A DNA stretch of 64,000 nucleotides from Macrostomum lignano (GCA_002269645.1 NIVC01000513.1:62001-126000), one strand, 5' to 3'; positions 7,666 to 63,768 are shown, counted from the first letter of the stretch. Notes: generated from the letters alone by a model not told the origin. Numbers and translations: made by a program.

Positions 7666-25382
<17,717 letters not shown>

Positions 25383-27195: not shown

Positions 27196-29051
27196 TCAGG
27201 AGGTGCGGAAGTCCAGAAACCAGATCCTCCAGCAGTGGGATATCCGCCTGCCATCGGGCATCAACTCGAAGTCCAGCATGCCGGACTGCTGCAGCTTCTC
27301 CAGCGAAATTGACTTCGCCTGCTCGACTGTCATGACCTCATGACTGGGGATCCCGGTAATGACCAAGTCGCTGTCAGCCACCTCTGCTGACCTTTGCGAG
27401 TTGCGGAACTTTGCTGACCAAAGTGACTTCAGCATCCGCTTGACGATACTGGCGCAGTCAGGAATTCTACCGATGTCTTCTAGAAGCTCCTGCTGTTGCC
27501 CCTCGTCGAGCGAAACGTCAGCTTCGCTGTCGAGCAGCTTCGCGTAGACCTTTATGGAGAATTTGTACGCGTCATCGTACTGATTTATGGCGTCGGAGCT
27601 GAGGATTTCCAGTAAACCGACCAGCGGAAAGAAGATGTAGAACTCAACTGACTCAACCGCCTTTGGATACAGACTGCTCTTAAACAGCCTAACGTACCGA
27701 GTTAGATTGTCAGAAATCTCGTTCACAGCCTCTTTTATATCGAATTTTGAGCTGTGACCATTCTTAAAGTACACATTGGCATCGCGCAGGAAGAAGTGCT
27801 TCATGCACACATCCTCGAAGTCTGAGCTCTCCATCATTTCTACGAGCAGCTGCAGCGACCGCCGCACGTGTTGCAGCAAATTCTCTGGCTTCCAGTCTTC
27901 TTCCGGCGTCTCATCGAGCATATAAAACAGCAGGTTCTTGGCTACGTACGTCTTCAGACCGCTCATTTTATTTCTGATCACCTTCTTGATGAGGAACTTG
28001 ACGATGATAAAGAACTGGCCCTGCTCGATGGTGAGGCTGTGCATGATGGCTCTCTCCAGCAGGGTTGTGCTCACCCGAACATGATGTCCCTGTCGGCCCG
28101 GAGGCGACGCAGTGACCGCGTGGCACCTGGGTGAGCTGCCGAGAACCTCCTCTCTGATCGTCCTCAGAATGCCAGCGGGCATCTGGGACGGCTGGCCTCT
28201 GCGGTTTGAGTAGCCGGGCTGCAGCAGCTCGATGCGGGGGTAGCCGCAGCAGGGCACAACCATGATAAAATCGAAGGCGACTGCGGCGTCAGACTTCGGG
28301 ATGTCCAGGTTTGGCTGGCTGACTACAATGAATGACATCCGGGTGAAAGTTGAGTCATTAGATTTTACTGGGGGACCAGGAACCCTGCGGTTATCCGGTG
28401 ACCCTAAAAGCAGGCACACACTCACACAAGATGTACTGTAGCACATGGATTTCGCATACAATCTCTAAGATGGCTTCATCCGCTTGGCAAGATTTAGAAT
28501 AAGACGAGGATTAGCGCAGTAAAATCGACTGTGTAATACTCATATCGGCGTCAACTGATGGCAACCACAGGCACTCTGTCTCACAATAGACTTCATCAGC
28601 TCTGCACCAAATTGCTCACCATGAAGAAAACAATTAAAATACCCTCGTGGTCGAAAGCCATTGTACTGAAAGCACTTTTAATACCGATGCCAGACTCACG
28701 GTCGTGGTTGAATGGAACGTGACCGTCACTGTAGACAGCTGGAGTCGGTTGTCCTTCTCCACCCGCGGTGCAGCTGGGACAAGTTGCCGAGTTCAGATGC
28801 AGCGGCTTCAAGTCCAGGAAGAAGCTGACGTCCACATCCGAGTCGTCCTCGACTCTGCCATCCAGCCGCGTCAGGCAGCTGCCCCAGCCGTCGCAGAAGC
28901 TGCCGAACACGAAAAATAGATCGCAATGAGTAGCCGACCGAATCATCTCCTCGAAGGCCCGAGCATGACCGATTTGAATGCGGGCGTTGGCCAATTTAAA
29001 CCCAGCTGTAGACATGGCAGCCGACAGCTGCTCACTGCAGCTCTGTGACAT
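27196..29051 (-). CDS. Mab-21 domain / cGAS-like (cGLR-type) nucleotidyltransferase, two exons (29051..28643 and 28403..27196)
   Basis: Phase-1 splice GAG G|GTATTT...TTTTAG|GG TCA joins the two ORFs. NTase motif FVFGSFCDGWG...DDSDVD, candidate third Asp in AFDFIMVVPC. Mab-21 C-lobe motifs RVSTTLLERAIM, LKTYVAKNLLFY, EEDWKPENL and MKHFFLRDANVY are present. Confidence 0.85.
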
Positions 29052-33316: not shown

Positions 33317-41230
<7,914 letters not shown>

Positions 41231-41894: not shown

Positions 41895-42284
41895 GGGTTG
41901 TTTTCGAAGCATCATTGCAGCGAAAAGGCTCGAGGTAAAAGACTGCTGCATCTCATCAGAAGAGGTAGTAACCCAGAGTTCGATTGCAAGATTATTAATA
42001 TCCTTTTTTCAAGCAACAAAGTAAAAAGCTCTCTTTGTTTAACGGTTTGATTGATTTTTTGCCAGTGCTAAGAAAAGCGATCGTTTAAAATAGCTTATAA
42101 GGGTTCGTTCGTGAGCCACGCCTAAGCCATGTGAATGGAATGCATAAAGTTGAGTAGTGCTTTTCAAAAAAACTCTACCTTTGTGCCCTGTGCTGTCTAC
42201 TGCCACAAGAAGTGTAAATAGGTATTGGGGCGCGGAAATTATTTCGGAAGTTTTATTCGTATTATATTCTCATTGTTGACCCAT

Positions 42285-43712
42285 TGTCATGCAAAATCCC
42301 ATTCTCATTCATAATCCCATTCCCATTCATAATCCCATTCTCATTCATAATCACATTCTCATTCATAATCCCATTCTCATTCATAATCCCATTCTCATTC
42401 ATAATCCCATTCTCATTCATAATCCCATTCCCATTGATAATCCCATTCTCATTCATAATCCCATTCTCATTCATAATCCCATTCTCATTCATAATCCCAT
42501 TCTCATTCATAATCCCATTCCCATTGGTAATCCCATTCTCATTCATAATCCAATTCTCATTCATAATCCCATTGTCATTCATAATCCCATTCTCATTCAT
42601 AATCCCATTCTCATTCATAATCCCATTCTCATTCATAATCCCATTCTCATTCATAATCCCATTCCCATTCATAATCCCATTCTCATTAATAAATCCCATT
42701 GTCATTCATAATCCCATTCTCATTCATAATCCCATTCTCATTCATAATCCCATTCTCATTCATAATCCCATTTTCATTCATAATCCCATTCTCATTCATA
42801 ATCCCATTCTCATTCATAATCCCATTCTCATTCATAATCCCATTCTCATTCACAATCCCATTCTCATTCAAAATCCCATTTTCATTCATAATCCCATTCT
42901 CATTCATAATCCAATTCTCATTCATAATCCCATTGTCATTCATAATCCCATTCTCATTCATAATCCCATTCTCATTCATAATCCCATTCTCATTCATAAT
43001 CCCATTCTCATTCATAATCCCATTCCCATTCATAATCCCATTCTCATTAATAAATCCCATTGTCATTCATAATCCCATTCTCATTCATAATCCCATTCTC
43101 ATTCATAATCCCATTCTCATTCATAATCCCATTTTCATTCATAATCCCATTCTCATTCATAATCCCATTCTCATTTATAATCCCATTCTCATTAATAATC
43201 CCATTCTCATTCAAAATCCCATTCTCATTCATAATCCCATTCTCATTCAAAATCCCATTCTCATTCAAAATCCCATTCTCATTCAAAATCCCATTCTTAT
43301 TCATAATCCCATTCTCATTCATAATCCCATTCTCATTCATAATCCTATTTTCATTCATAATCCCATTCTCATTCAAAATCCCATTCTCATTCATAATCCC
43401 ATTCTCATTCAAAATCCCATTCTCATTCAAAATCCCATTCTTATTCATAATCCCATTCTCATTCATAATCCCATTCTCATTCATAATCCTATTTTCATTC
43501 ATAATCCCATTCTCATTCAAAATCCCATTCTCATTCATAATCCCATTCTCATTCAAAATCCCATTCTCATTCATAATCCCATTCTCATTCATAATCCTAT
43601 TTTCATTCATAATCCCATTCTCATTCATAATCCCATTCTCATTCATAATCCCATTCCCATTCACAATCCCATTCTTATTCATAATCCCATTCTCATTCAT
43701 AATCCCATTTTC
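42285..43712. repeat. 18-bp minisatellite (CATAATCCCATTCTCATT)n
   Basis: About 78 copies. Confidence 0.95.
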
Positions 43713-44838
43713 CTTTTCATAAGGCACAGGTCGAACTTATGCGCCCAGCTTGAGAATTAGTAGCGTGCGGAGCGGGCGGTCTGGCTTCATGCTATAATAA
43801 AACCTTGCTTGCCATACTGCGATATATTCTGCTTATACTATAGAAATATTTCAAACACACTGGCTCTCTAATGCCAATGGTAGCTTTTATGAGTGTTATG
43901 AGTATCCAAAATTATTCAAGGCAGTGTATTTCATAGTCAACGAGAATGCAAAGGCTCAATGCAAAGCAATTAATGGTTTGAGGGGGTTAGGGTTAGCGCT
44001 TAACCAGTTTGTCCCAGCGCAGTTGTTAGGCAACCAACAACCCCACTCCAAGCTTTTTCTCAGCTGCGAGTCTTCTGTGTCCCGCGCTCGTAGTAGGTTG
44101 CTGGCTTTTGCCCTCAAACCTCAGCAGCCATAGGGAATTGAGGTCGGCTGGTCTGGAGCTGGTCTGTTTGGATTATAGCTGCGGTCGAAACACATAAAAG
44201 TCAAAGTTTCTCCGCTTCGCTGTAAGCGCGAAAGCAATTGGAAATCGCAAAGACAAGGCATGTTCTTAAAGGAAAGCGATAAAGGTATGTAGTATGAAGA
44301 TACTATTTTCAATTTCAGCTGTTAGCGACGTATGTTAGAAGCAAAAATCTGACGACATTTCGAATTCTCAAGAAACATTTAGCAAAATCGTAGTTTATGA
44401 GAAATTTCACTCAGGTCTGATTCGAGGAAATCCTTCATGCCACCAGTGAGCTAGGTACTATAGACATTCAGTTCCAGCGCATTGCTGTGGAGTGTTGTGT
44501 GTTCTGAAGTGGTGCGTGCTGCGGAGTGGTGTGTGGGGTGCTCTGGTGTAGTGGACCTCTAAAACTCTGCTGAGCTAGCTTTTTACGCTGCTATTTCTGG
44601 GCATAAATGTACTTTTAGATTATATAGCGTACTCTTGTGTTGAGTAAGCAAATATGGATTGAACCCATGCAGTGAGAAGTCTTGAAGCATTAACAAAGCC
44701 TCAATTTTGAAAGTCTAAGATTCATCGCCTATTTCCTATTGTTGAACAAAGGGTTCCTCGCATTCCTAGCAAAGTCTGTTTAGATTGGTTAAACTCTTAT
44801 ATAATGATGTGACTTTCCTCCGTCCTTCGGTTTCAGGC

Positions 44839-46092
44839 ATGGCTTCGAACTACCTAAGGCTGCTTCTGTTGTGTTGCATTGCTGCAGCAACACTGGGATC
44901 TGATGAAGTCTCCAGCTTCTGTCTCGTCGGCAACTTGAGTGGCGAGTGCCCGAAGTGTGCAGCTTTCAGGAGGCCGGTGAACGGCACCCCTCCGATGCTG
45001 GTGGCCCCAAAAGGTAACAAAGGCAAGGGCGCTGGATATCCTGCAGCCTCGGGAAGCTCAGCCTCTCCTCAGGCATCCGGTGGAGGCGGCAAGGCGAGGG
45101 GAGGTCGGCGCAGCCCGCGGGAAGCGGCTCAGACTGCTGCTGATGCAATCAAGAACTGGATAGTTGATAATGGAAACAATCTTGAAAACTACAGCTGCAA
45201 AGTTAATGGAACTTACAGAGACTGGTTCATCGCAATTAAAAGGCCAGGCTCGCATGAATATGCTTACTTGTCATCAATGAATAAGGTTAATTGGCAATAC
45301 GCTAGAGATATTCGAACACAGGGACCGGTACATGAAACACTGGAGCAGGCTAGACAAAATAGAGACGCAGTCTTTGCTTACAGTGACAAGCCGCCACCAA
45401 ATGAAACCTGGATTCCTGGTTTCGGCCATCTGAAAGGACTGTTCATGGTTGGGAATCCCGGATTCTGGATGATGTTCTCGGCGAGACATTTCCCCAGATT
45501 TGATGAGCAAGGCAGGTTAATTCAAGATCGTACGAATGCCCAATCGTTCATCTGCATCAGCGTAAAGAGCGAAACTATTAAAGATCTCTCTGGATGGGTT
45601 GAAAAGGCGAAGCCAAGGTACCATCATCCGCATAATTTTCGCTCCAGCGAGGTCGAAAGTCAAGAAGCTTCAATTTCAATTAAGAGTTTTTCCAGCTCGG
45701 GCAATGTCCCGTTCCAGTTGTTTGTAAAAAGAAAGAGCAGCACTGCAGATTGCATATATAAGAAAATTAGAGAGTCGTACAACGTAGGAGAATTCCGGGT
45801 TCAGTCCTGGCTCAGAACTATTCCCGACAACGACAGGATTGTCCATGGTAACAACTTAGTTAAAAATATTAAACAAATCAGAATGACAGTTGGTAATCGG
45901 CTTTGGGAATGGAATACCACAACAGACCACTCAAAGTGGTGCGTCTCAAAGCAATCGAACATAGTCTGCCTCTCTGACCTGAACCGAATGCGTGATCAAC
46001 TGACCCAGGGTGGAGCCGCTGTCTGTATCAAAGATTCTAATGTCTCGAGTGCCTTCAACGCCTTGGTATTGGAAGTGTACACTAGGAATTAA
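44839..46092 (+). CDS. Secreted DNase II-family (plancitoxin-like) protein, single coding exon
   Basis: Signal peptide MASNYLRLLLLCCIAAATLG, then a linker. DNase II motifs: SCKVNG...DWFIAIKRP, YSDKPP, GHLKG, GFWMMFS, AQSFICISV, TDHSKWCVS, VCLSDLNRM...QGGAAVC. ATG 44839 follows the acceptor TTTCAG. Confidence 0.85.
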   Translation: MASNYLRLLLLCCIAAATLGSDEVSSFCLVGNLSGECPKCAAFRRPVNGTPPMLVAPKGNKGKGAGYPAASGSSASPQASGGGGKARGGRRSPREAAQTAADAIKNWIVDNGNNLENYSCKVNGTYRDWFIAIKRPGSHEYAYLSSMNKVNWQYARDIRTQGPVHETLEQARQNRDAVFAYSDKPPPNETWIPGFGHLKGLFMVGNPGFWMMFSARHFPRFDEQGRLIQDRTNAQSFICISVKSETIKDLSGWVEKAKPRYHHPHNFRSSEVESQEASISIKSFSSSGNVPFQLFVKRKSSTADCIYKKIRESYNVGEFRVQSWLRTIPDNDRIVHGNNLVKNIKQIRMTVGNRLWEWNTTTDHSKWCVSKQSNIVCLSDLNRMRDQLTQGGAAVCIKDSNVSSAFNALVLEVYTRN

Positions 46093-48171: not shown

Positions 48172-48490
48172 AAACCACCCCTGAGCCCCCTGAGCACCCA
48201 CCCCGGCAACCACCCTGAGCACCCACCCCGGCAACCACCCTGAGCACTCACCCCGGCAACCACCCTGAGCACTCACCCCGGCAACCACCCTGAGCACCCA
48301 CCCCGCAACCACCCTGAGCACCCACCCCCGCAACCACCCTGAGCACCCACCCCGGCAACCACCCTGAGCACCCACCCCGGCAACCACCCTGAGCACCCAC
48401 CCCGGCAACCACCCTGAGCACCCACCCCGGCAACCACCCTGAGCACCCACCCCGGCAACCACCCAGAGCACCCTCCCCGAGCATTCACCT
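48172..48490. repeat. 25-bp minisatellite (CAACCACCCTGAGCACCCACCCCGG)n
   Basis: About 12 copies; paralogous to the array at 62222-63315. Confidence 0.9.
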
Positions 48491-49013
48491 CTGATCACCC
48501 AACCCAGAGCATGGTTATGTACATGCAGTATAATAATAACCTAAAAGTTTTTTCCAGCCGTTTCTCTGGGATTCTGGATAGATATAGCAGAGTACCTGAA
48601 TGCATCCACTATATGCAAGCAGAAAATTTCATGCAGTGAGAACTGAGATGATTAAATTATAGTTATAGTCATACTGGTTATAAGACAACAGTTTCAATTT
48701 AGAACGCATACAGAGGCTCGCATCATCATCCAGAGGTGCCTAACACGAGATCAGGATTAGCTAATTTTCTGTTGAGTATATTTAGCATCTTTTCTATAGA
48801 GGCTGCAACTCCTGCGGAGGCAGAGAAGTCACAGAGCTGTGTCGTCACAGAGGCAGTAACGCCGATTCTGTAAGAGTTTTGCCGTACAAAGCCATGCTCA
48901 TTGATATTCATAGACTGGGTTCATAGTCATAGAGGGTCATACTTAAGAGTTGCCAATCATAAATGACTGCTTTAAATTGGATTTCCAAAGTCGGTGCCAT
49001 CCGCAGCAGCACT

Positions 49014-50610: not shown

Positions 50611-52732
50611 TCCCATTCTCATTTATAATCCCATTCTCATTCATATTCCCATTCTCATTCATAATCCCATTCTCATTCATAATCCCATTCTCATTCATAA
50701 TCCCATTCTCATTCATAATCCCATTCTCATTCATAATCCCATTCTAATTCATAGTCCCATTCTCATTCATAATCCCATTCTCATTCATAATCCCATTCTC
50801 ATTCATATTCCCATTCTCATTAATAATCCCATTCTCATTTATAATCCCATTCTCATTAATAATCCCATTCTCATTTATAATCCCATTCTCATTCATAATC
50901 CCATTCTCATTCATAATCCCATTCTCATTCATATCCAATTCTCATTCATATTCCCATTCTCATTCATATCCAATTCTCATTCATATTCCCATTCTCATTC
51001 ATAATCCCATTCTCATTCATAATCCCATTCTCATTCATAATCCCATTCTCATTCATAATCCCATTCTCATTCATAATCCCATTCTCATTCATAATCCCAT
51101 TCTAATTCATAGTCCCATTCTCATTCATAATCCCATTCTCATTCATAATCCCATTCTCATTCATATTCCCATTCTCATTAATAATCCCATTCTCATTCAT
51201 AATCCCATTCTCATTCATAATCCCATTCTCATTCATAATCCCATTCTCATTCATAATCCCATTCTCATTCATAATCCCATTCTCATTCATAATCCCATTC
51301 TCATTCATAATCCCATTCTCATTCATAATCCCATTCTCATTCATAATCCCATTCTCATTCATAATCCCATTCTCATTCATAATCCCATTCTCATTCATAT
51401 CCAATTCTCATTCATAATCCCATTCTCATTCATAATCCCATTCTCATTCATAATCCCATTCTCATTCATAATCCCATTCTCATTCATAATCCCATTCTCA
51501 TTCATAATCCCATTCTCATTCATAATCCCATTCTCATTCATAATCCCATTCTCATTCATAATCCCATTCTCATTCATAATCCCATTCTCATTCATAATCC
51601 CATTCTCATTCATAATCCCATTCTCATTCATAATCCCATTCTCATTCATAATCCCATTCTCATTCATAATCCCATTCTCATTCATAATCCCATTCTCATT
51701 CATATTCCCATTCTCATTAATAATCCCATTCTCATTTATAATCCCATTCTCATTAATAATCCCATTCTCATTCATAATCCCATTCTCATTCATAATCCCA
51801 TTCTCATTCATAATCCCATTCTCATTCAAAATCCCATTCTCATTCATAATCCCATTCTCATTCATAATCCCATTCTCATTCATAATCCCATTCTCATTCA
51901 TAATCCCATTCTCATTCATAATCCCATTCTCATTCATAATCCCATTCTAATTCATAATCCCATTCTCATTCATAATCCCATTCTCATTCATAATCCCATT
52001 CTCATTCATAATCCCATTCTCATTCATAATCCCATTCTCATTCATAATCCCATTCTCATTCATATCCAATTCTCATTCATAATCCCATTCTCATTCATAA
52101 TCCCATTCTCATTCATAATCCCATTCTCATTCATAATCCCATTCTCATTCATAATCCCATTCTCATTCATAATCCCATTCTCATTCATAATCCCATTCTC
52201 ATTCATAATCCCATTCTCATTCATAATCCCATTCTCATTCATAATCCCATTCTCATTCATAATCCCATTCTCATTCATAATCCCATTCTCATTCATAATC
52301 CCATTCTCATTCATAATCCCATTCTCATTCATAATCCCATTCTCATTCATAATCCCATTCTCATTCATATTCCCATTCTCATTAATAATCCCATTCTCAT
52401 TTATAATCCCATTCTCATTAATAATCCCATTCTCATTCATAATCCCATTCTCATTCATAATCCCATTCTCATTCATAATCCCATTCTCATTCATAATCCC
52501 ATTCTCATTCATAATCCCATTCTCATTCATAATCCCATTCTCATTCATAATCCCATTCTTATTCATATTCCCATTCTCATTAATAATCCCATTCTCATTC
52601 ATAATCCCATTCTCATTCATAATCCCATTCTCATTCATAATCCCATTCTCATTCCTAATCCCATTCTCATTCATAATCCCATTCTCATTCATAATCCCAT
52701 TCTCATTCATAATCCCATTCTCATTCATAATC
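50611..52732. repeat. 18-bp minisatellite (CATAATCCCATTCTCATT)n, second array
   Basis: About 115 copies; same unit as 42285-43712. Confidence 0.95.
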
Positions 52733-53735: not shown

Positions 53736-53799
53736 ACTCTGTTGTTGTTGTTGTTGTTGTTGTTGTCTCAGAATTCGCCGTACCGTATTACGGTACAGA

Positions 53800-55275
53800 A
53801 AGTATAGTACAGTATAGTACAGTATAGTACAGTATAGTACAGTATAGTACAGTATAGTACAGTATAGTACAGTATAGTACAGTATAGTACAGTATAGTAC
53901 AGTATAGTACAGTACAGACAGTATAGTACAGTACAGACAGTATAGTACAGTACAGATAGTATAGTACAGTACAGATAGTATAGTACAGTACAGAGAGTAT
54001 AGTACAGTACAGATAGTATAGTACAGTATAGTACACTATAGTACAGTACAGAGAGTATAGTAGAGTATAGTACAGTATAGTACAGTATAGTACAGTACAG
54101 ACAGTATAGTACAGTATAGTACAGTACAGACAGTATAGTACAGTACAGACAGTATAGTACAGTACAGATAGTATAGTACAGTACAGACAATAGAGTACAG
54201 TACAGAGAGTATAGTACAGTACAGATAGTATAGTACAGTACAGACAGTATAGTACAGTACAGATAGTATAGTACAGTACAGACAATAAAGTACAGTACAG
54301 AGAGTATAGTAGAGTATAGTACAGTATAGTACAGTATAGTACAGTATAGTACAGTATAGTACAGTATAGTACAGTACAGACAGTATAGTACAGTACAGAC
54401 AGTATAGTACAGTACAGATAGTATAGTACAGTACAGATAGTATAGTACAGTACAGAGAGTATAGTACAGTACAGATAGTATAGTACAGTATAGTACACTA
54501 TAGTACAGTACAGAGAGTATAGTAGAGTATAGTACAGTATAGTACAGTATAGTACAGTACAGACAGTATAGTACAGTATAGTACAGTACAGACAGTATAG
54601 TACAGTACAGACAGTATAGTACAGTACAGATAGTATAGTACAGTACAGACAATAGAGTACAGTACAGAGAGTATAGTACAGTACAGATAGTATAGTACAG
54701 TACAGACAGTATAGTACAGTACAGATAGTATAGTACAGTACAGACAATAAAGTACAGTACAGAGAGTATAGATAGTATAGTACAGTACAGACAGTATGGT
54801 ACAGTACAGACAGTATGGTACAGTACAGACAGTATAGTACAGTACAGACAGTATGGTACAGTACAGACAGTATAGTACAGTACAGATAGTATAGTACAGT
54901 ACAGACAGTATAGTACAGTACAGAGAGTATAGATAGTATAGTACAGTACAGACAGTATAGTACAGTACAGACAGTATAGTACAGTACAGACAGTATAGTA
55001 CAGTACAGACAATAAAGTACAGTACAGAGAGTATAGTACAGTACAGACAGTATAGTACAGTATAGTACAGTATAGTACAGTACAGACAGTATAGTACAGT
55101 ATAGACAGTATAGACAGTATAGTACAGTACAGACAGTATAGTACAGTATAGACAGTATAGACAGTATAGACAGTATAGTACAGTATAGACAGTATAGTAC
55201 AGTATAGACAGTATAGTACAGTATAGTACAGTATAGTACAGTATAGACAGTACGAGCCGTATAATACAGTATAGA
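53800..55275. repeat. 5/10-bp satellite (AGTATAGTAC / AGTACAGACA)n
   Basis: Read directly. Confidence 0.95.
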
Positions 55276-56451
55276 CATGCAGCCGAGTGCCTTGAAAGCA
55301 ATATTTATGCATTTGCGTGTTTTCTTTCGACTGATATGGTGCTGCCAACTGATACAAATGCACTGCTGCGAGATATTGTATAACTGTTTTCATGTAAATG
55401 CAACACTACAAATTATTAAACTGTCTCTGTAATCGTCATGATCCCACAGTAATTGTCATTTTTAACCAAAAAAAAACTAAAACTTACGTACTAAGTTAAA
55501 CTTTATGCTTAGAGTAACATTTTTATGAAAATTTTGAGTCCGATTTTCGTCCCTTTGAGCCCGACTTAGGCATCCGCGGGACACGAAAAGTGTCGGACAT
55601 GAACTGTTCTAACGGACGCCATAAAATTCGTGAGAATTTTTAAACCGGCTGTATTTTATAGTCAACGACAGCGCATAGGCTCAATGAAAGAAAAAATTCA
55701 ATGGTTTGAGGGGGGTAGGGTTAGCGCTAAATCAGTTTGTCCCTGCGCCGTTGCTTGGCAACCAACAACCCACCCCCAAGCCTTTGCTCAGCTGCGAGTC
55801 TTCTGTGTCCCGCGCTAGCAGTAGGTTGCTGGCATTTGCCATTAAACCTCAGCAGCCATTGGGCATTGAGGTCGGCTGGTCTGCAGCTGGTCCGTTTGGA
55901 TTATAGCTGCGGTCGAGACGCATACAAGTCAAAGTTTCTCCGCTTCGATGTAAGCGCGAAAGCAATTGGAAATCGCAAAGACAAGGCATGTTCTTAAAGG
56001 AAAGCGATAAAGGTATGTAGTATAAAGATACTAGTTTCTTTTTTCGATTTTTCGATTTTCTATTTTTCTATTTTCTATTTTTCTATTTTCTAAACTATTT
56101 ACTAGCTGTTAGACACAATCGATTCGAAGCAAAGTCTGAGGAAATTTTTGAAATTCCCAAAACATTGAGCAAATATTATTTTACGAGATAATTCTCACAG
56201 GATTGAGCAAACCCTTCATTCCACCAGTGAACTAGGTACTATAGGCACTCAGTTCCACTGCATTTTCCGTGAAAAAATGTTCGTCACTGTTCACGGCTTT
56301 TCTGTTCACGGCAGTATCGATGCGATAGTGCTGTCAGAGCAAACGACTAATAAACTGACACCAAAGACAATTTATATCCTACTAACAGTAGGCCAATCAG
56401 TGCATAACCCAGTTGTGCAAGGAAACTCAGACGCTCAGCGCTTCTTTTTCG

Positions 56452-58811
56452 ATGCAGCAATTCTGCGGTTGCTGCTGCTTGCCGCGGCCTTCGAGTGCGG
56501 CCTCTGCTACTCGCAGCTGCGCCACCGCCCAGAACTCCAAACTTGTGATTCGAGGTATCCGAACTGTTGGGATCGGAGTGGATCAGGTCAGTGACTCATT
56601 TTTTCTAGAAGGACTCAAACAACTTGTAATTTGGCCCACAAGTTCAAACACTCCAGTAACCATGGCAACAAGTTTTAGAGCGAGGCGCAGCGGCTGAGCA
56701 GTTCGACAAGTGCAGCTGCAACTCCAAAGTGTGGCAGCCACGAAAGTGCATGGATGGCGAAGCAGGTGAAGCTGGCCCAAAATATTTGCAATCTGAGGTG
56801 AGCAAAGGCGATGCAGCCGGTGCAACAGCTGAGAAGCACAGCACAGTCGCTGCTACTGGTGACAATAAACCAGAAACGGTGAAGCATGGTGAGGAACCTA
56901 AAACAGAATCCACTGCAGCAGATGACGCATCAAAAATTTCGTGTCGAGATCACGAGAACAAAAAATTGGACTGGTTCTTCGCCATCAAGCAGGACCGCTC
57001 GAAGCGGCTCATTTATGTGGCGAGCAACGGAGAGGGAGGCGGATGGATTTCCGATCCAGAACTTGGACCTGTGTTAAAAACTTTTGAACAAGCCAAATAC
57101 AGAAGAACCGCATCAGAACTGTTTGTATACAACGATCATCCTCCTGATCGTCAAGCAGCCAGAAATTCAGGAGCTCACATGAAGGGCGTGATTCTTCACG
57201 GCTCCAGCAGTGAAGACACCGGATTCTGGATGATGCACAGCGTGCCGCAGGTGAATTTGAATGTCAATTGGGAGGAACTCGATGGCCAGTCATTCTTCTG
57301 CGTGACGCTGAAAAGGCCGGAAATTAAAAATGTAGAAAGCATGGTAACAAAATTGCTAAACGACAAACCTCCAGCCGAAATTTCGTATACACAGCTGCGC
57401 ACGAAAGACGGTAAAAAATTGCACGTCAATATCAAGCCATCTCGCCGTGCAAGGGATATTTACAGTGGAATACAGGTAGATGGTCGCAGCTTGACAAAAG
57501 TCCAAGTCCAGTCCCACCGTCTCGGCACTTCTCGGCCTTTACCATCAAACGGTGATGCAGCGAATGTGCCTGCTGTTAAGTTTCAACTTGGAAATGAATT
57601 TATTGGCATGCTGTTCAGCCAGGACAACTCAAAGTGGAGCATCGGAGAGATCCCAGTGGAAGGTGAGGAGAGCAGGAAATTTGTGTGCGCAGGCGACTTG
57701 GACCGGGTGAAGGCACATCAGGATCGAGCTGGCTGCCTGGTGTGCATGGAAAATGTGGGGCTGTGGAACCTACTGAACGATACCATAACAGCTGGAAACG
57801 AGCTGACCAATCAAGGACAGGATGTGCCAGGTGCAGATGGCTTCACGTGCAAGATTGACGAGGGGAACTCAGTTGACTGGTTCGTCATGGTGAAGAACAG
57901 TGGTAATCATGCTTACAAATATTTGTCCTCTCGGGATAATGAATGGCATGAAAACAATCAGAACATCAGAGGTCAGAACGGTCGGATCAACCATAACATT
58001 CCTCTCAAGGCCACACTAGATCAAGAATTTCTTCTGCCAATCAGGAATGGCCCGGGGCGTAGTTCGAGTATTTACTCTTACAGTGACCAGCCTCCAAGCG
58101 GAAGTGCGCCAAGTGGTAGAGCTCACGCTAAGGGAGTTGTCATGTTTGGGAAATCAACTGGATTCTGGCTGATGCACTCAATGCCAAAGTTTCCAAATTT
58201 TTCGGAAGCTAGTTACACCTGGCCCCCCAGAGCGAACGATGGATTCAACCTTCGAAATTGCGAAAATTCAACCTTGCGTCACCATCCGGACGTCTCAGCG
58301 GCCTGCGATTCTAGACCAGTTAGCGAGAATGCAGGTGCATAAATATTTCGGCAACGTTCTTCTTCCGTCCATCGCAGACGGAGAAATATCAAGCACCAGG
58401 CTGACATCCTATGGCGAAGTGGAATTCATCCACATTGCGAAATCAAAGTTTGACGATGAAGGCATCGATATTTACGAGTTTGTTTCAAATTTGATTGACG
58501 CCGGGCACCTGCGAGTTCAGACCTATTTAAGGAACATAAATGATGCTTTGACTGACCCTGAAAGTGTAAGCCAAGTTAGAAACAGAACCTACTTTGGCAG
58601 GAATATAATGTCTGGAACGGATCATTCAAAATGGTGCGTCTCCGAAAAGAAAGTCGAGCAGAACGAGCCAGTGCCAGCTGCCAAAAAGTACTTTTGCATT
58701 GGCGATTTAAATCGAGAAATACCACAGAAAAAGCGAGGAGGCGGCGCGCTTTGTTTTTTAAATGCCAACGTGTGGGCCAAATTCCATTCATTTATCAGGG
58801 ATGGAGGATAA
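56452..58811 (+). CDS. Secreted protein with two tandem DNase II domains (exons 56452-56586 and 56679-58811; apparent frameshifts just after the ATG and near 58250)
   Basis: Signal-like (M)AAILRLLLLAAAFECGLC, then a 92-nt phase-1 intron in frame with ORF 56729. Domain A: SCRDHENKKLDWFFAIK, AHMKG, FWMMHSVP, GQSFFCVTL, QDNSKW, VCAGDLDR. Domain B: TCKIDEGNSVDWFVMVK, AHAKG, FWLMHSMPKFP, then in ORF 58239 TDHSKWCVS and FCIGDLNR...RGGGALC. Confidence 0.82.
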
Positions 58812-58889
58812 GGGAAAAGGGATAGGGATAGAGGATAAGTGATAGGGGATAGGAGATAAGGGATAGGGGATAGGGGATAAGGGATAGGG

Positions 58890-59140: not shown

Positions 59141-59904
59141 TGATAGGGGATAAGGGATATGGGATAATTGATAAGGAATGGGGGACACTAGTTGTATTGC
59201 TATTTGCTGCAAACTTTTTATTGGTAGCTTGCTTATTTTTAATTGCTAGCACGTACTATTGTAACCGCGTGCGCTATTGCTAGTTGATTGAATATTGTGC
59301 AGCTTACGAGTATTTCATTGAAAGTGAAAACGATTACAATGATGGGCATTATGGTGTTTAAAAATTTATTTAAAAAATCAATCACCTACTTAGAAACATT
59401 TCATCTGCTTTACGACTATCTCGAAGATCCTTTTGTTATCGGATTATGCATGTCCCAAACCCCATCGTTGTCGTCAGTTATTGCTTATTTTGAATCTACC
59501 GATCAATCAGATTGGAAGTACCTGCCAAAGGACATTGCAAGCGCCACTAAATGGACTTTATTTAAGATTATTTTGAATATAATCTCGTATAGTTTCAAAT
59601 TTGAATTATCCATTTACTAACTATTCGAGTATAGCTTAATTTTATATTTTCATTGAGAGATTTGTGTAGTATCTGTGTATTATTTGGATTTCGTCTATAA
59701 TAAATTGAGTGGCATCGCATGGAAAGATGTCAATTTATTGTCAAAGAAGACGTCTGATACGTCAATGGCACAAGGGTGCATGCATGAGGTAATCGATCAC
59801 TTTGTGTTGTTGAGGACTGGTGACTTTGTCTGCTGTCATTTCTTCCCCCGCCACGTTTGTGCAGCCTTTCCGCATCGCATAGCGGGCACCAACTCTGGGC
59901 ACCC

Positions 59905-61577
59905 ACCCTGAGCACTCACCCTGTGCACTCTCCCTGTGCACTCACCCTGTGCACTCACCCTGTGCACTCACCCTGTGCACTCACCCTGTGCACTCACCCT
60001 GTGCACTCACCCTGTGCACTCACCCTGTGCACCCTCCCTGTGCACTCACCCTGTGCACTCACCCTGTGTACCCTCCCTGTGCACTCACCCTGAGCACTCA
60101 CCCTGTGCACTCACCCTGTGCACTCACCCTGTGTACCCTCCCTGTGCACTCACCCTGAGCACTCACCCTGTGCACTCACCCTGTGCACTCACCCTGTGCA
60201 CTCACCCTGTGCACTCACCCTGTGTACCCTCCCTGTGCACTCACCCTGAGCACTCACCCTGTGCACTCACCCTGTGCACCCTCCCTGTGCACTCACCCTG
60301 TGCACTCACCCTGTGCACTCACCCTGTGCACTCACCCTGTGCACTCACCCTGAGCACTCACCCTGTGCACTCACCCTGTGCACTCACCCTGTGCACTCAC
60401 CCTGAGCACTCACCCTGAGCACTCACCCTGTGCACTCACCCTGTGCACCCTCCCTGTGCACTCACCCTGTGCACTCACCCTGTGCACTCACCCTGTGCAC
60501 TCACCCTGAGCACTCACCCTGTGCACCCTCCCTGTGCACTCACCCTGTGCACTCACCCTGTGTACCCTCCCTGTGCACTCACCCTGAGCACTCACCCTGT
60601 GCACTCACCCTGTGCACTCACCCTGTGTACCCTCCCTGTGCACTCACCCTGAGCACTCACCCTGTGCACTCTCCCTGTGCACTCACCCTGTGTACCCTCC
60701 CTGTGCACTCACCCTGTGCACTCACCCTGTGTACTCTCCCTGTGCACTCACCCTGAGCACTCACCCTGTGCACTCTCCCTGTGCACTCACCCTGTGTACC
60801 CTCCCTGTGCACTCACCCTGTGCACTCACCCTGTGTACCCTCCCTGTGCACTCACCCTGTGCACTCACCCTGTGCACTCACCCTGTGCACTCACCCTGTG
60901 TACCCTCCCTGTGCACTCACCCTGTGCACTCACCCTGTGTACCCTCCCTGTGCACTCACCCTGTGCACTCACCCTGTGTACCCTCCCTGTGCACTCACCC
61001 TGTGCACTCACCCTGTGTACCCTCCCTGTGCACTCACCCTGTGTACCCTCCCTGTGCACTCACCCTGTGCACTCACCCTGTGCACTCACCCTGTGCACTC
61101 ACCCTGTGCACTCACCCTGTGTACCCTCCCTGTGCACTCACCCTGTGCACTCACCCTGAGCACTCACCCTGTGCACTCACCCTGTGTACCCTCCCTGTGC
61201 ACTCACCCTGTGCACTCACCCTGTGCACTCACCCTGTGTACCCTCCCTGTGCACTCACCCTGTGCACTCACCCTGTGCACTCACCCTGTGCACTCACCCT
61301 GTGCACTCACCCTGTGCACTCACCCTGAGCACTCACCCTGTGCACTCACCCTGAGCACTCACCCTGTGCACTCACCCTGTGTACCCTCCCTGTGCACTCA
61401 CCCTGTGCACTCACCCTGTGCACTCACCCTGTGTACCCTCCCTGTGCACTCACCCTGTGCACTCACCCTGTGCACTCACCCTGTGCACTCACCCTGTGTA
61501 CCCTCCCTGTGCACTCACCCTGTGCACTCACCCTGAGCACTCACCCTGTGCACTCACCCTGAGCACTCACCCTGTGC
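59905..61577. repeat. 13-bp minisatellite (TCACCCTGTGCAC / TCCCTGTGYAC)n
   Basis: More than 120 copies. Confidence 0.95.
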
Positions 61578-62221: not shown

Positions 62222-63315
62222 CAGCCTGAGCACCCAACCCAGCAACCACCCTGAGCACCCAACCCAGCAACCACCCTGAGCACCCAACCCAGCAACCACC
62301 CTGAGCACCCAACCAGCAACCACCCTGAGCACCCAACCCAGCAACCACCCTGAGCACCCAACCCAGCAACCACCCTGAGCACCCAACCCAGCAAGCACCC
62401 TGAGCACCCAACCCAGCAACCACCCTGAGCACCCAACCCAGCAACCACCCTGAGCACCCAACCCAGCAAGCACCCTGAGCACCCAACCCAGCAAGCACCC
62501 TGAGCACCCAACCCAGCAACCACCCTGAGCACCCAACCCAGCAACCACCCTGAGCACCCAACCCAGCAAGCACCCTGAGCACCCAACCCAGCAACCACCC
62601 TGAGCACCCAACCCAGCAACCACCCTGAGCACCCAACCCAGCAACCACCCTGAGCACCCAACCCAGCAACCACCCTGAGCACCCAACCCAGCAAGCACCC
62701 TGAGCACCCAACCCAGCAACCACCCTGAGCACCCAACCCAGCAACCACCCTGAGCACCCAACCCAGCAAGCACCCTGAGCACCCAACCCAGCAACCACCC
62801 TGAGCACCCAACCCAGCAACCACCCTGAGCACCCAACCCAGCAACCACCCTGAGCACCCAACCCAGCAAGCACCCTGAGCACCCAACCCAGCAACCACCC
62901 TGAGCACCCAACCCAGCAACCACCCTGAGCACCCAACCCAGCAACCACCCTGAGCACCCAACCCAGCAACCACCCTGAGCACCCAACCCAGCAACCACCC
63001 TGAGCACCCAACCCAGCAACCACCCTGAGCACCCAACCCAGCAACCACCCTGAGCACCCAACCCAGCAACCACCCTGAGCACCCAACCCAGCAAGCACCC
63101 TGAGCACCCAACCCAGCAACCACCCTGAGCACCCAACCCAGCAAGCACCCTGAGCACCCAACCCAGCAACCACCCTGAGCACCCAACCCAGCAACCACCC
63201 TGAGCACCCAACCCAGCAAGCACCCTGAGCACCCAACCCAGCAAGCACCCTGAGCACCCAACCCAGCAACCACCCTGAGCACCCAACCCAGCAACCACCC
63301 TGAGCACCCAACCCA
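62222..63315. repeat. 25-bp minisatellite (CAACCACCCTGAGCACCCAACCCAG)n
   Basis: About 43 near-identical copies. Confidence 0.95.
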
Positions 63316-63768
63316 GAACATGGTTAAGTACAGTGCGTGCAATATCATAATATCCTAAAAGTTTCTTCCAAGCCGTTCATCTGGGATCCTAAATAGACAT
63401 AGCAGAGTAACTGGATGCATGAACTGAGATGATTAAATTATAGTTAGTCATTATGGTTATAAGGGAATAATTGCACTTTAGGACTCATACAAGTACAGAA
63501 GCTCACCATCATTCAGAGGGGCCTAAACACGACGTCTGGATTAGCTTATTTTCTCTTGAATATACTTCGCATTATTTCTATAGACGCTTCACCTCCTGCG
63601 GAGGCAAATAATTTACAAAGCCATGTGGCTTCTGGACTAAATATATCGAGCTCATTAATATTCATACACTGGATTGATAGTCATACAGGCTCATACTTGA
63701 GAGTTGCCAATCACTAGTGACTGCTTTAAATTGAGTTTACCCATTCGGTGCCATCTGCAGCAGCAACT

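What the first reader, a model, noticed from the sequence alone, without database searches (positions are those of the whole stretch)
56452..58811. Double DNase II: two fused domains (four PLD-like halves), the first with HxK changed to NxK
Seen: after the signal and an acidic linker, domain A has AHMKG but QDNSKW in place of DHSKW, and HQDRAGC in place of Q-x-x-RGGG. Domain B has all canonical motifs (AHAKG, HSMPKFP, DHSKW, GDLNR, RGGG). Known: canonical DNase II is one pseudo-dimeric domain needing both His. Inference: an active nuclease fused to a probable pseudo-nuclease that might bind DNA, add processivity or act as a decoy. I do not recall this architecture being described. A frameshift near 58250, beside a short ATTCAACCTT duplication, must be resolved.
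Basis: partly seen in the sequence, partly recalled or inferred. Interest (0 to 1): 0.72.

Follow-up and report, generated by a model that had tools for sequence, protein, structure and literature searches.

The report
Tandem DNase II: dead plus live domain
An unidentified eukaryote carries a gene whose single reading frame fuses two acid-DNase (DNase II) domains, the first lacking an essential catalytic histidine and the second complete. This is a moderately unusual variant of a well-known enzyme, and as assembled the second domain is interrupted by a one-base change of frame.

Summary
Window 56452-58811 (+) holds two full DNase II domains (Pfam PF03265, E 8e-61 and 1.6e-21). One open frame runs through domain A, an 11-residue linker and the first half of domain B, so the fusion is not a gene-model artefact.

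- **Domain A:** it keeps the first HxK and the HSxP histidine. The second half-site has changed (DHSKW to DNSKW, GDxNR to GDLDR, Q..RGGG to H..RAGC). It still models as a confident DNase II fold (pLDDT 89; TM 0.72 to PDB 5i3e).
- **Domain B:** it keeps every near-invariant catalytic column, but its two halves lie in different frames. The +1 change falls within 58223-58262, with no intron there.
- **Frame change:** a conserved dynein gene in the same window has a similar single-base break. An assembly error is therefore the likelier cause, but this is unproven.
- **Start:** the ATG at 56452 is one base out of frame with the signal-like segment.
- **Relatives:** no orthologue exists among 1.84 billion representative proteins. 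Multi-domain DNase II-like predictions do exist (Trichinella), but all their domains are dead.

Best reading: a secreted or lysosomal acid nuclease in which B cuts and A is a selected, non-catalytic DNA-binding or dimer-mimicking partner. This is a new variant of a known kind, of moderate interest.

The parts
56452..56454 (+). ATG proposed as the start. It is one base out of frame with the signal-like segment that follows and lies inside an acceptor-like TTTTTCGATGCAG.
   Evidence: Three-frame translation; sequence. The 5' end is unresolved. Three options remain: a 1-nt error just after the ATG; an upstream mini-exon from ATG 56277 (donor 56313/56314, acceptor 56457/56458); or a continuous frame-0 ORF from ATG 56277.
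56457..56586 (+). Coding part of the first exon in frame mod3=0: hydrophobic signal-like AILRLLLLAAAFECGLC, then a short Cys-containing stretch.
   Evidence: It resembles the paralogue's signal MASNYLRLLLLCCIAAATLGS. The donor CAG|GTCAGT sits at 56586/56587.
56587..56678 (+). Inferred 92-nt GT..AG intron, AT-rich, ending TTTTAG. It joins frame 0 to the frame of ORF1 (phase 1).
   Evidence: Sequence and my phase arithmetic. Its size and composition match the dynein introns of about 75-90 nt in the same window. No RNA evidence.
56679..56917 (+). Low-complexity, mildly acidic A/G/E/K/T-rich linker before domain A.
56918..57799 (+). DNase II domain A. The first HxK (AHMKG) and HSVP are kept. The second half-site is degenerate: DNSKW, GDLDR, HQDRAGC.
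   Evidence: Pfam; own HMM; conserved-column table; alignment to 5i3e; AF2 pLDDT 89.1 and pTM 0.89; Foldseek 5i3e_B E 8.4e-14, TM 0.72.
57800..57832 (+). Short acidic A-B linker (within ...NDTITAGNELTNQGQDVPGADG...). It has no stop, no Met and no signal, and is in frame with both domains.
   Evidence: It is predicted disordered: composite residues 302-320 have pLDDT below 50.
57833..58228 (+). DNase II domain B, N-terminal half (AHAKG, GFWLMHSMPKFP, YTWPP), frame mod3=2.
58223..58262 (+). Interval in which the reading frame changes by +1. It contains a C6 run (58223-58228) and abuts an A4 run (58263-66). No usable GT..AG intron is present.
   Evidence: As assembled, ORF1 reads on out of frame to TAA 58340-58342.
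58260..58811 (+). DNase II domain B, C-terminal half in frame mod3=0 (AKIQPCVTI, DHSKW, GDLNR, KRGGG), then stop TAA.
   Evidence: Pfam E 1.6e-21; own HMM positions 226-356; column table. Composite model pLDDT is 84-97 over most of domain B.
44839..46092 (+). Neighbouring single-domain DNase II paralogue (417 aa, single ORF, signal peptide). It is the closest relative of domain B.
   Evidence: Pfam E 5e-45; translation; 32% identity to B; NJ clade of the three window domains. It has F at the 98%-conserved HSxP histidine and Q at the 97%-conserved Arg of RGGG.

Best explanation
This is a nuclear gene of an unidentified eukaryote, whose dynein is most like animal DNAH7. It encodes a secretory-pathway (lysosomal or secreted) acid deoxyribonuclease built from two complete DNase II domains in one polypeptide.

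Domain B has both HxK motifs, the third crucial His, the conserved Asn/Arg and RGGG. It should therefore cut DNA by the PLD-type two-histidine mechanism: a covalent phospho-histidine intermediate and 3'-phosphate products.

Domain A is a folded DNase II domain whose second half-site has been dismantled (His to Asn, Asn to Asp, Gln to His, GGG to AGC). It cannot complete that chemistry. Selection has nevertheless kept it as a non-catalytic partner. It most likely holds DNA, or takes the place of the second protomer of the DNase II dimer clamp, next to the single live site.

The +1 frame change in domain B and the out-of-frame ATG are more likely base-calling errors of a long-read assembly of a repeat-dense region than real lesions.

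Shown: the architecture, the motif states, the fold of A and the frame change. Inferred: activity of B, inactivity and DNA binding of A, secretion, and the error nature of the frame change.
For: - **Fusion:** one open frame spans domain A, the linker and the N-half of B. B has no Met, signal or stop of its own.
- **Domain B:** it matches the family residue at all catalytic columns that are at least 94% conserved in 117 homologues: H387, K389, H408, H755, K757, N805, R806, Q810 and R813, plus G815 of the RGGG glycines (G814 85%, G816 93%). Its two pieces model as one confident domain.
- **Domain A:** it differs exactly at H755, N805, Q810, G814, G816 and W647. W647 is the Trp of the W239-W282-R298 triad said to position the second HxK.
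- **Literature:** H113 and H295 of human DNase II are essential, and H295 mutants still interact with DNA. BthDNase II is an intertwined homodimeric U-clamp around dsDNA (PMC5449587). Three crucial His were identified in pig DNase II (cited).
- **Selection on A:** A is only 28% identical to B and 26% to the paralogue. It is still an uninterrupted domain of about 300 codons that folds at pLDDT 89 and matches 5i3e. That implies long-term purifying selection after loss of catalysis.
- **Shared lineage features:** all three window domains lack the same two conserved Cys columns (666 and 844) and form one clade.
- **Assembly error:** a DNAH7-like dynein 65-70% identical to animal proteins shows a single-base frame break at about 20258-20266, with homology continuing on both sides and no intron. 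The locus is packed with minisatellites. Domain B shows no other lesion.
Against: - There is no RNA, read or protein evidence.
- There is no orthologue in any database searched, so conservation of the fusion cannot be tested.
- As assembled, the gene encodes domain A plus half of B with a 38-residue out-of-frame tail, and so no complete active site.
- One to two frame problems in 2.2 kb is more than the one seen in about 10 kb of dynein.
- The signal peptide is not in frame with any nearby ATG.
- AF2 gave no confident A-B packing (pTM 0.65, linker pLDDT below 50, domain A poorly covered by the alignment). The clamp idea is untested.
- Mammalian DNase II is usually described as a monomer, and no eukaryotic structure exists.
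Confidence: 0.55

Rival explanations
1. Young pseudogene. The frame change in domain B (and perhaps a lesion at the start codon) is real. The locus no longer makes a working nuclease, and the tandem architecture is a relic.
For: The frame change is present in the only sequence available. The ATG at 56452 is out of frame with the signal-like segment. The gene sits in a repeat-dense region, has a Ty3/gypsy-like element within 20 kb, and has a paralogue that could cover the function. No orthologue is known.
Against: There is only one lesion in about 2.1 kb of coding sequence. The 190 codons after the shift stay open and keep every conserved motif. A conserved dynein in the same window has the same kind of single-base break, which points to the assembly. 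A frame-0 ORF from ATG 56277, or an upstream mini-exon, can supply a start without any lesion.
Confidence: 0.3
2. Two products from one locus. Alternative splicing, an internal promoter or proteolysis in the acidic linker releases domain B as an ordinary single-domain DNase II, and A as a separate DNase II-like pseudoenzyme. The fusion would then have no joint mechanism.
For: The A-B linker is short, acidic and predicted disordered. Pig DNase II is known to be proteolytically processed (my own knowledge). Free-standing dead DNase II-like proteins are abundant in Trichinella (PMC4148230).
Against: Domain B has no signal peptide or initiator Met of its own before its first conserved strand, and no GT..AG pair brackets A in phase. 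Cleavage after secretion would still require synthesis as a fusion.
Confidence: 0.1
3. Domain A is still catalytic, with altered chemistry or substrate. For example, it could be a one-histidine site acting on RNA or nicked DNA, or one that traps a covalent DNA adduct as TDP1 second-His mutants do.
For: Domain A keeps the first HxK, the HSxP His, both Lys and the Arg of RGGG. DNase II has been reported to cut RNA (PMC11430429). One proposed mechanism makes the first-motif His the nucleophile.
Against: The second-motif His is essential in the human and pig enzymes. Cheng et al. make it the nucleophile, which leaves no first step at all. Five further near-invariant positions of the same half-site are also changed, the pattern of relaxed constraint on catalysis.
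Confidence: 0.05

Closest known systems
Canonical eukaryotic DNase II (human DNase II alpha/beta; C. elegans NUC-1, CRN-6, CRN-7), Pfam PF03265
   Same: Domain B and the neighbouring paralogue match the family model end to end. B has both HxK motifs, HSxP, GDxNR and RGGG. Both genes have an N-terminal hydrophobic signal-like segment.
   Different: Known enzymes have one domain per chain; here two are fused. Identity to any database protein is at most about 35%. All three window domains lack two otherwise 93%-conserved cysteines.
Burkholderia thailandensis DNase II homodimer (PDB 5i3e/5unb)
   Same: It is the only solved structure of the family and the best fold match of the domain A model (TM 0.72, E 8e-14). 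Two protomers form a U-shaped clamp with the HxK motifs facing the DNA-sized cavity. A covalent A-B pair could imitate this.
   Different: The bacterial dimer has two identical live sites and no signal peptide. Here the two 'protomers' are 28% identical, one is dead, and they are joined by an 11-residue linker. The packing of A on B was not resolved.
Trichinella DNase II-like expansion, including predicted three-domain proteins (e.g. KRZ17526, T. zimbabwensis)
   Same: These are DNase II-like domains that have lost catalytic histidines. Several such domains occur in one predicted chain (PMC4148230, PMC5012510).
   Different: In the Trichinella proteins examined, every domain lacks both His (TTSKG/DKSQW and similar), so they are wholly non-catalytic. 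They are computer-predicted isoforms. The window gene pairs one half-dead domain with one complete domain in a single exon and is not closely related to them (at most 33% identity).
PLD-superfamily enzymes built from duplicated HKD halves (PLD3/PLD4, Nuc dimer, TDP1)
   Same: The logic of building an active site, or an assembly, from duplicated homologous modules, with frequent asymmetry between the copies.
   Different: There the duplication makes one active site. Here an already duplicated, complete two-half domain has been duplicated again, giving four PLD-like halves and at most one working site.

Membership tests
DNase II (PF03265), domain B | Significant match to the family profile over its full length | tested here: met
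   Pfam profile positions 1-129 in ORF1 and 190-321 in ORF2. Own HMM positions 32-165 and 226-356 of 379.
DNase II (PF03265), domain B | Two HxK motifs, third crucial His (HSxP), conserved Asn/Arg (GDxNR), Q..RGGG | tested here: met
   AHAKG, HSMPKFP, DHSKW, GDLNR and QKKRGGG are all at the family columns.
DNase II (PF03265), domain B | Uninterrupted coding sequence | tested here: not met
   There is a +1 frame change within 58223-58262 in the assembly. Whether it exists in the organism cannot be tested here.
DNase II (PF03265), domain A | Family profile match and PLD-like DNase II fold | tested here: met
   Own HMM positions 29-188 and 212-359; AF2 pLDDT 89.1; Foldseek 5i3e_B E 8.4e-14, TM 0.72.
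DNase II (PF03265), domain A | Second HxK histidine (human H295, Bth H279) and its half-site (Asn of GDxNR, Gln, GGG) | tested here: not met
   DNSKW, GDLDR and HQDRAGC. Columns 755, 805, 810, 814 and 816 all deviate. Domain A is a structural member of the family but not a catalytic one.
DNase II (PF03265), domain A | First HxK and HSxP histidines | tested here: met
   AHMKG and HSVPQ.
DNase II enzymes (functional definition) | Metal-independent endonuclease with acid pH optimum giving 3'-phosphate ends | not testable with these tools
   Needs recombinant protein and an assay.
DNase II enzymes (functional definition) | Entry into the secretory or lysosomal pathway through an N-terminal signal peptide | tested here: inconclusive
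   A signal-like hydrophobic stretch exists (56457-56510, frame 0), but no nearby ATG is in frame. Three 5' models remain open.
Homodimeric DNase II clamp (as in 5i3e), imitated within one chain | Domains A and B pack like the two protomers around a DNA-sized cavity | tested here: inconclusive
   Composite AF2 model: pTM 0.65, linker pLDDT below 50, and domain A poorly modelled because homologues aligned only to B. The tools give no way to compare inter-domain geometry with the crystal dimer.

The most novel reading that the evidence does not exclude
The fusion is an obligate intramolecular 'heterodimer'. Domain A replaces the second protomer of the DNase II dimer clamp, so the enzyme grips duplex DNA with two lobes but has one live site. 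That would turn a two-site double-strand cutter into a single-site (nicking or processive) acid nuclease. It would be the first case of a DNase II regulated or re-specified by a built-in pseudoenzyme copy of itself.
Probability: 0.15. Interest if true: 0.6.

Novelty: new variant of a known kind. Interest (0 to 1): 0.38.

Why it matters
DNase II is the main lysosomal DNA-degrading enzyme, and its loss drives cGAS/STING and TLR9 autoinflammation in animals. No eukaryotic DNase II structure exists yet, and its oligomeric state on DNA is unsettled.

A natural covalent pair of one dead and one live domain would be a ready-made tool. It could show whether DNase II works as a two-lobed clamp, and what a non-catalytic lobe adds: affinity, processivity, or nick versus double-strand cut.

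It is also a clean example of a pseudoenzyme kept by selection next to its active paralogue. The practical importance is limited by three things: the organism is unknown, no orthologue is available, and the gene is not intact in the only sequence at hand.

Tried and rejected
1. **The ATTCAACCTT direct repeat** (58243-52 and 58266-75) as the cause of the shift. Deleting one copy plus the spacer (23 nt) leads to frame mod3=1, which soon hits stops.
2. **A mini-intron.** The only GT..AG pair that restores the frame is 19 nt (58212-58230). It would delete the conserved YTWPP, and it is far shorter than this genome's introns of 75-92 nt and upward (several hundred nt near the 3' end of the dynein gene).
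3. **Programmed frameshifting.** There is no zero-frame stop or recognisable slippery or stop context at the site. The zero frame runs on for 38 codons.
4. **Two separate genes or a mis-join.** The frame is continuous, the linker is unique sequence, and B has no start or signal.
5. **Search for orthologues or the source record.** The word-indexed search gave at most 32% identity. Exhaustive phmmer gave a best E of 4.9e-24. Two metagenome scans found nothing, or only unrelated single-domain, multi-exon genes. Two exact look-ups found no record.
6. **A profile search meant to survey tandem DNase II proteins** returned only 9 single-domain hits.
7. **Literature searches for tandem or two-domain DNase II** found no description.
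8. **Rfam and tRNA scans for clues to the organism** found none.
9. **Composite AF2 model to test A-B packing** was uninformative, because the alignment covered only domain B.
10. **DNA comparison of the two genes' 5' ends, to place the start codon,** found no similarity.

Full report
**What the window is**

The window is eukaryotic nuclear DNA. It holds a DNAH7-like axonemal dynein heavy-chain gene at about 12.9-24.3 kb. That gene has long exons and AT-rich GT..AG introns, about 75-90 nt in the body of the gene and several hundred nt near its 3' end. The window also holds a Mab-21_C-containing ORF and a Ty3/gypsy-like retroelement. Minisatellites are very dense, and they account for most of the other long 'ORFs'.

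The dynein is 65-74% identical to animal DNAH7 proteins and is not closer to anything else. The source is therefore probably an animal or a near relative that is absent from the databases. Exact look-ups of two window proteins found no record.

**The observation**

Pfam DNase_II matches ORF 56729-58342 in three stretches (E 8.4e-61). It matches ORF 58239-58811 on the C-terminal part of the profile (E 1.6e-21).

I built an HMM from 117 single-domain homologues to resolve the layout:
- Domain A covers ORF1 residues 64-357.
- The N-half of domain B covers ORF1 residues 369-502.
- The C-half of domain B covers ORF2 residues 49-187.

Domain A, an 11-residue linker and the first half of B lie in one uninterrupted frame. 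B has no Met, signal or stop of its own before it. The fusion is therefore read directly from the DNA and does not come from gene prediction. The 553-codon open run exceeds every one of 2000 shuffles, whose maximum was 208.

**State of the catalytic positions**

In the 117-sequence alignment only three His columns are at least 97% conserved. These fit the 'three crucial histidines' (His115, His132, His297) reported for pig DNase II by Cheng et al. 2006, as cited. The mapping of the middle one to HSxP is my inference.

- **Domain B** has all three His, both Lys, the Asn-Arg of GDxNR, the Gln and RGGG.
- **Domain A** keeps the first HxK (AHMKG), HSVP, both Lys and the Arg. It differs at these family columns:
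  - second His, now Asn (DNSKW);
  - Asn of GDxNR, now Asp (GDLDR);
  - Gln, now His;
  - two of the three Gly (RAGC);
  - the Trp equivalent to Bth W239, now His.
- **The 12-kb-upstream paralogue** (44839-46092) keeps both HxK motifs. It has Phe at the HSxP histidine and Gln at the Arg of RGGG.

Published work bears on these changes:
- H113 and H295 are essential in human DNase II alpha, and H295 mutants still bind DNA.
- H100/K102 and H279/K281 form the site in the B. thailandensis enzyme.
- W239-W282-R298 positions the second motif (PMC5449587).
- A recent review adds a conserved Asn to the catalytic set (PMC12684396).

Under either published assignment of the nucleophile, domain A cannot complete the reaction.

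**Is domain A a decayed remnant?**

No. Domain A is only 28% identical to B and 26% to the paralogue, so the copies are old. It is still an open domain of about 300 codons. With an alignment of 79 sequences it models at pLDDT 89.1 and pTM 0.89. Its best structural match is BthDNase II (5i3e_B, E 8.4e-14, TM 0.72).

The three window domains share the loss of the same two conserved cysteines. They group together in a neighbour-joining tree, with B and the paralogue as sisters. Long-branch attraction is a caveat for that tree. This pattern fits a lineage-specific family in which A lost catalysis long ago and has been kept by selection.

**The frame change**

Frame mod3=2 carries the conserved YTWPP up to 58228. 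Frame mod3=0 carries AKIQPCVTI, the family's GQSFLC block, from 58260. The change is +1 and lies within 58223-58262. That interval starts with a C6 run and ends beside an A4 run.

It is not an intron. The only frame-restoring GT..AG pair is 19 nt long and would remove YTWPP, whereas no intron seen in this window is shorter than about 75 nt.

As assembled, translation runs 38 codons out of frame to TAA at 58340-58342. That leaves a dead domain A plus half of B.

Three points make a base-calling error the more likely cause; I put it at roughly two to one:
- The 190 codons after the shift remain open with every motif intact.
- The dynein gene has the same kind of lesion at about 20258-20266. There [11 protein letters not shown] reads in one frame and [10 protein letters not shown] in the next. 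The tblastn segments overlap, and 65-70% identity continues on both sides.
- The region is dense in repeats and so was probably assembled from long reads.

This is not proof. I kept the junction as unknown residues in all analyses and did not edit the DNA.

**The 5' end**

The ATG at 56452 is in frame mod3=1, while the signal-like AILRLLLLAAAFECGLC reads in frame mod3=0. That segment resembles the paralogue's MASNYLRLLLLCC....

A 92-nt intron (donor CAG|GTCAGT at 56586/7, acceptor TTTTAG|AG at 56678/9) joins frame 0 to the ORF1 frame in phase. Its size and composition match the dynein introns.

Three options remain for the start, and only RNA data can choose between them:
- a one-base error just after the ATG;
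- an acceptor at 56457/8 fed by a mini-exon from ATG 56277;
- a continuous frame-0 ORF from ATG 56277.

**Relatives and precedent**

Exhaustive phmmer against 1.84 billion representatives gave 907 hits. None scored below E 1e-30, and the best was 35% identical. The word-indexed searches and two metagenome scans added nothing closer. No orthologue is therefore available, and conservation of the fusion cannot be tested.

Three of the 150 best hits have more than one DNase II domain:
- **A Trichinella zimbabwensis protein family** has three domains, and every domain lacks both His.
- **An eel model** has two C-terminally truncated copies and is probably a merged tandem pair.
- **A Sarcoptes model** has a partial copy followed by a full copy.

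Trichinella is known for more than 100 DNase II-like genes, almost all without the HKD motif (PMC4148230, PMC5012510). Dead DNase II-like domains and multi-domain predictions are thus on record. I found no case of one half-dead plus one complete domain in a single exon, and no paper describing a tandem DNase II.

**Mechanism**

The best-supported reading is a secretory-pathway acid nuclease in which B does the chemistry and A is a non-catalytic DNA-binding partner.

The BthDNase II crystal shows an intertwined homodimer forming a U-shaped clamp around a DNA-sized cavity. An attractive extension is that A-B imitates this dimer with one live site. I could not test this. The composite AF2 model had good confidence only for B (pLDDT 84-97 over most of the domain), a disordered linker and pTM 0.65, because homologues aligned only to B.

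The rivals are:
- a young pseudogene (about 0.3);
- separate products made by processing or alternative transcription (about 0.1);
- residual or altered catalysis by A (about 0.05).

**Verdict**

The finding is real and correctly read at the motif level. It is a new variant of a known enzyme family and is of moderate interest. Its weight is limited by the unresolved frame change, the unresolved start, the unknown organism and the lack of any orthologue or expression evidence.

Noticed in passing
window 44839-46092 (+): A second, single-domain DNase II gene lies 10 kb upstream: 417 aa in a single ORF, with signal peptide MASNYLRLLLLCCIAAATLGS. It keeps both HxK motifs but has Phe at the 98%-conserved HSxP histidine and Gln at the 97%-conserved Arg of RGGG. 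It may itself be catalytically impaired. Only domain B of the tandem gene has the full set.
   Followed up: partly
window about 12877-24268 (+), frame break at about 20258-20266: A DNAH7-like axonemal dynein heavy-chain gene, 65-74% identical to animal proteins, has a single-base frame break with no intron. [11 protein letters not shown] reads in one frame and [10 protein letters not shown] in the next. This is probably an assembly indel and serves as a useful control site for read mapping.
   Followed up: partly
window 27196-28461 (-): A 421-aa ORF has a Mab-21 HhH/H2TH-like C-terminal domain (E 1.1e-6), so it is possibly a cGAS/Mab-21-type nucleotidyltransferase. It shares a 64-kb window with two DNase II genes. 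No link between them was examined.
   Followed up: no
window 37407-39888 (-): A Ty3/gypsy-like retroelement carries RT, RNase H and an integrase zinc-binding domain. RT and RNase H lie in different overlapping frames. The same 21-nt repeat family flanks it on both sides (36585-36726 and 40866-41016).
   Followed up: no
window 30000-63316, many arrays: The density of micro- and minisatellites is exceptional. Examples:
- (CT)n of about 2 kb at 33536-35499.
- One 18-mer family at 42280-43709 and 50611-52732.
- A 19-mer at 53789-55252.
- A 13/39-mer at 59884-61577.
- One 25-mer family at 48188-48505 and 62225-63316.

Most long ORFs without Pfam hits are translations of these arrays, including the 541-aa ORF next to the gene.
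   Followed up: partly
window 58797-58889: A G/A-rich 7-nt repeat (GGGATAG-like) begins within the last codons of the tandem DNase II gene and runs straight on from its stop codon. The gene therefore has no ordinary 3' flank in view, and no polyadenylation signal was looked for.
   Followed up: no
window 56440-56460 and 44825-44841: In both DNase II genes the candidate start ATG sits at or inside a polypyrimidine-plus-CAG, acceptor-like sequence: TTTTTCGATGCAG in one and GGTTTCAGGCATG in the other. This suggests a 5' intron immediately upstream of, or overlapping, the start.
   Followed up: no
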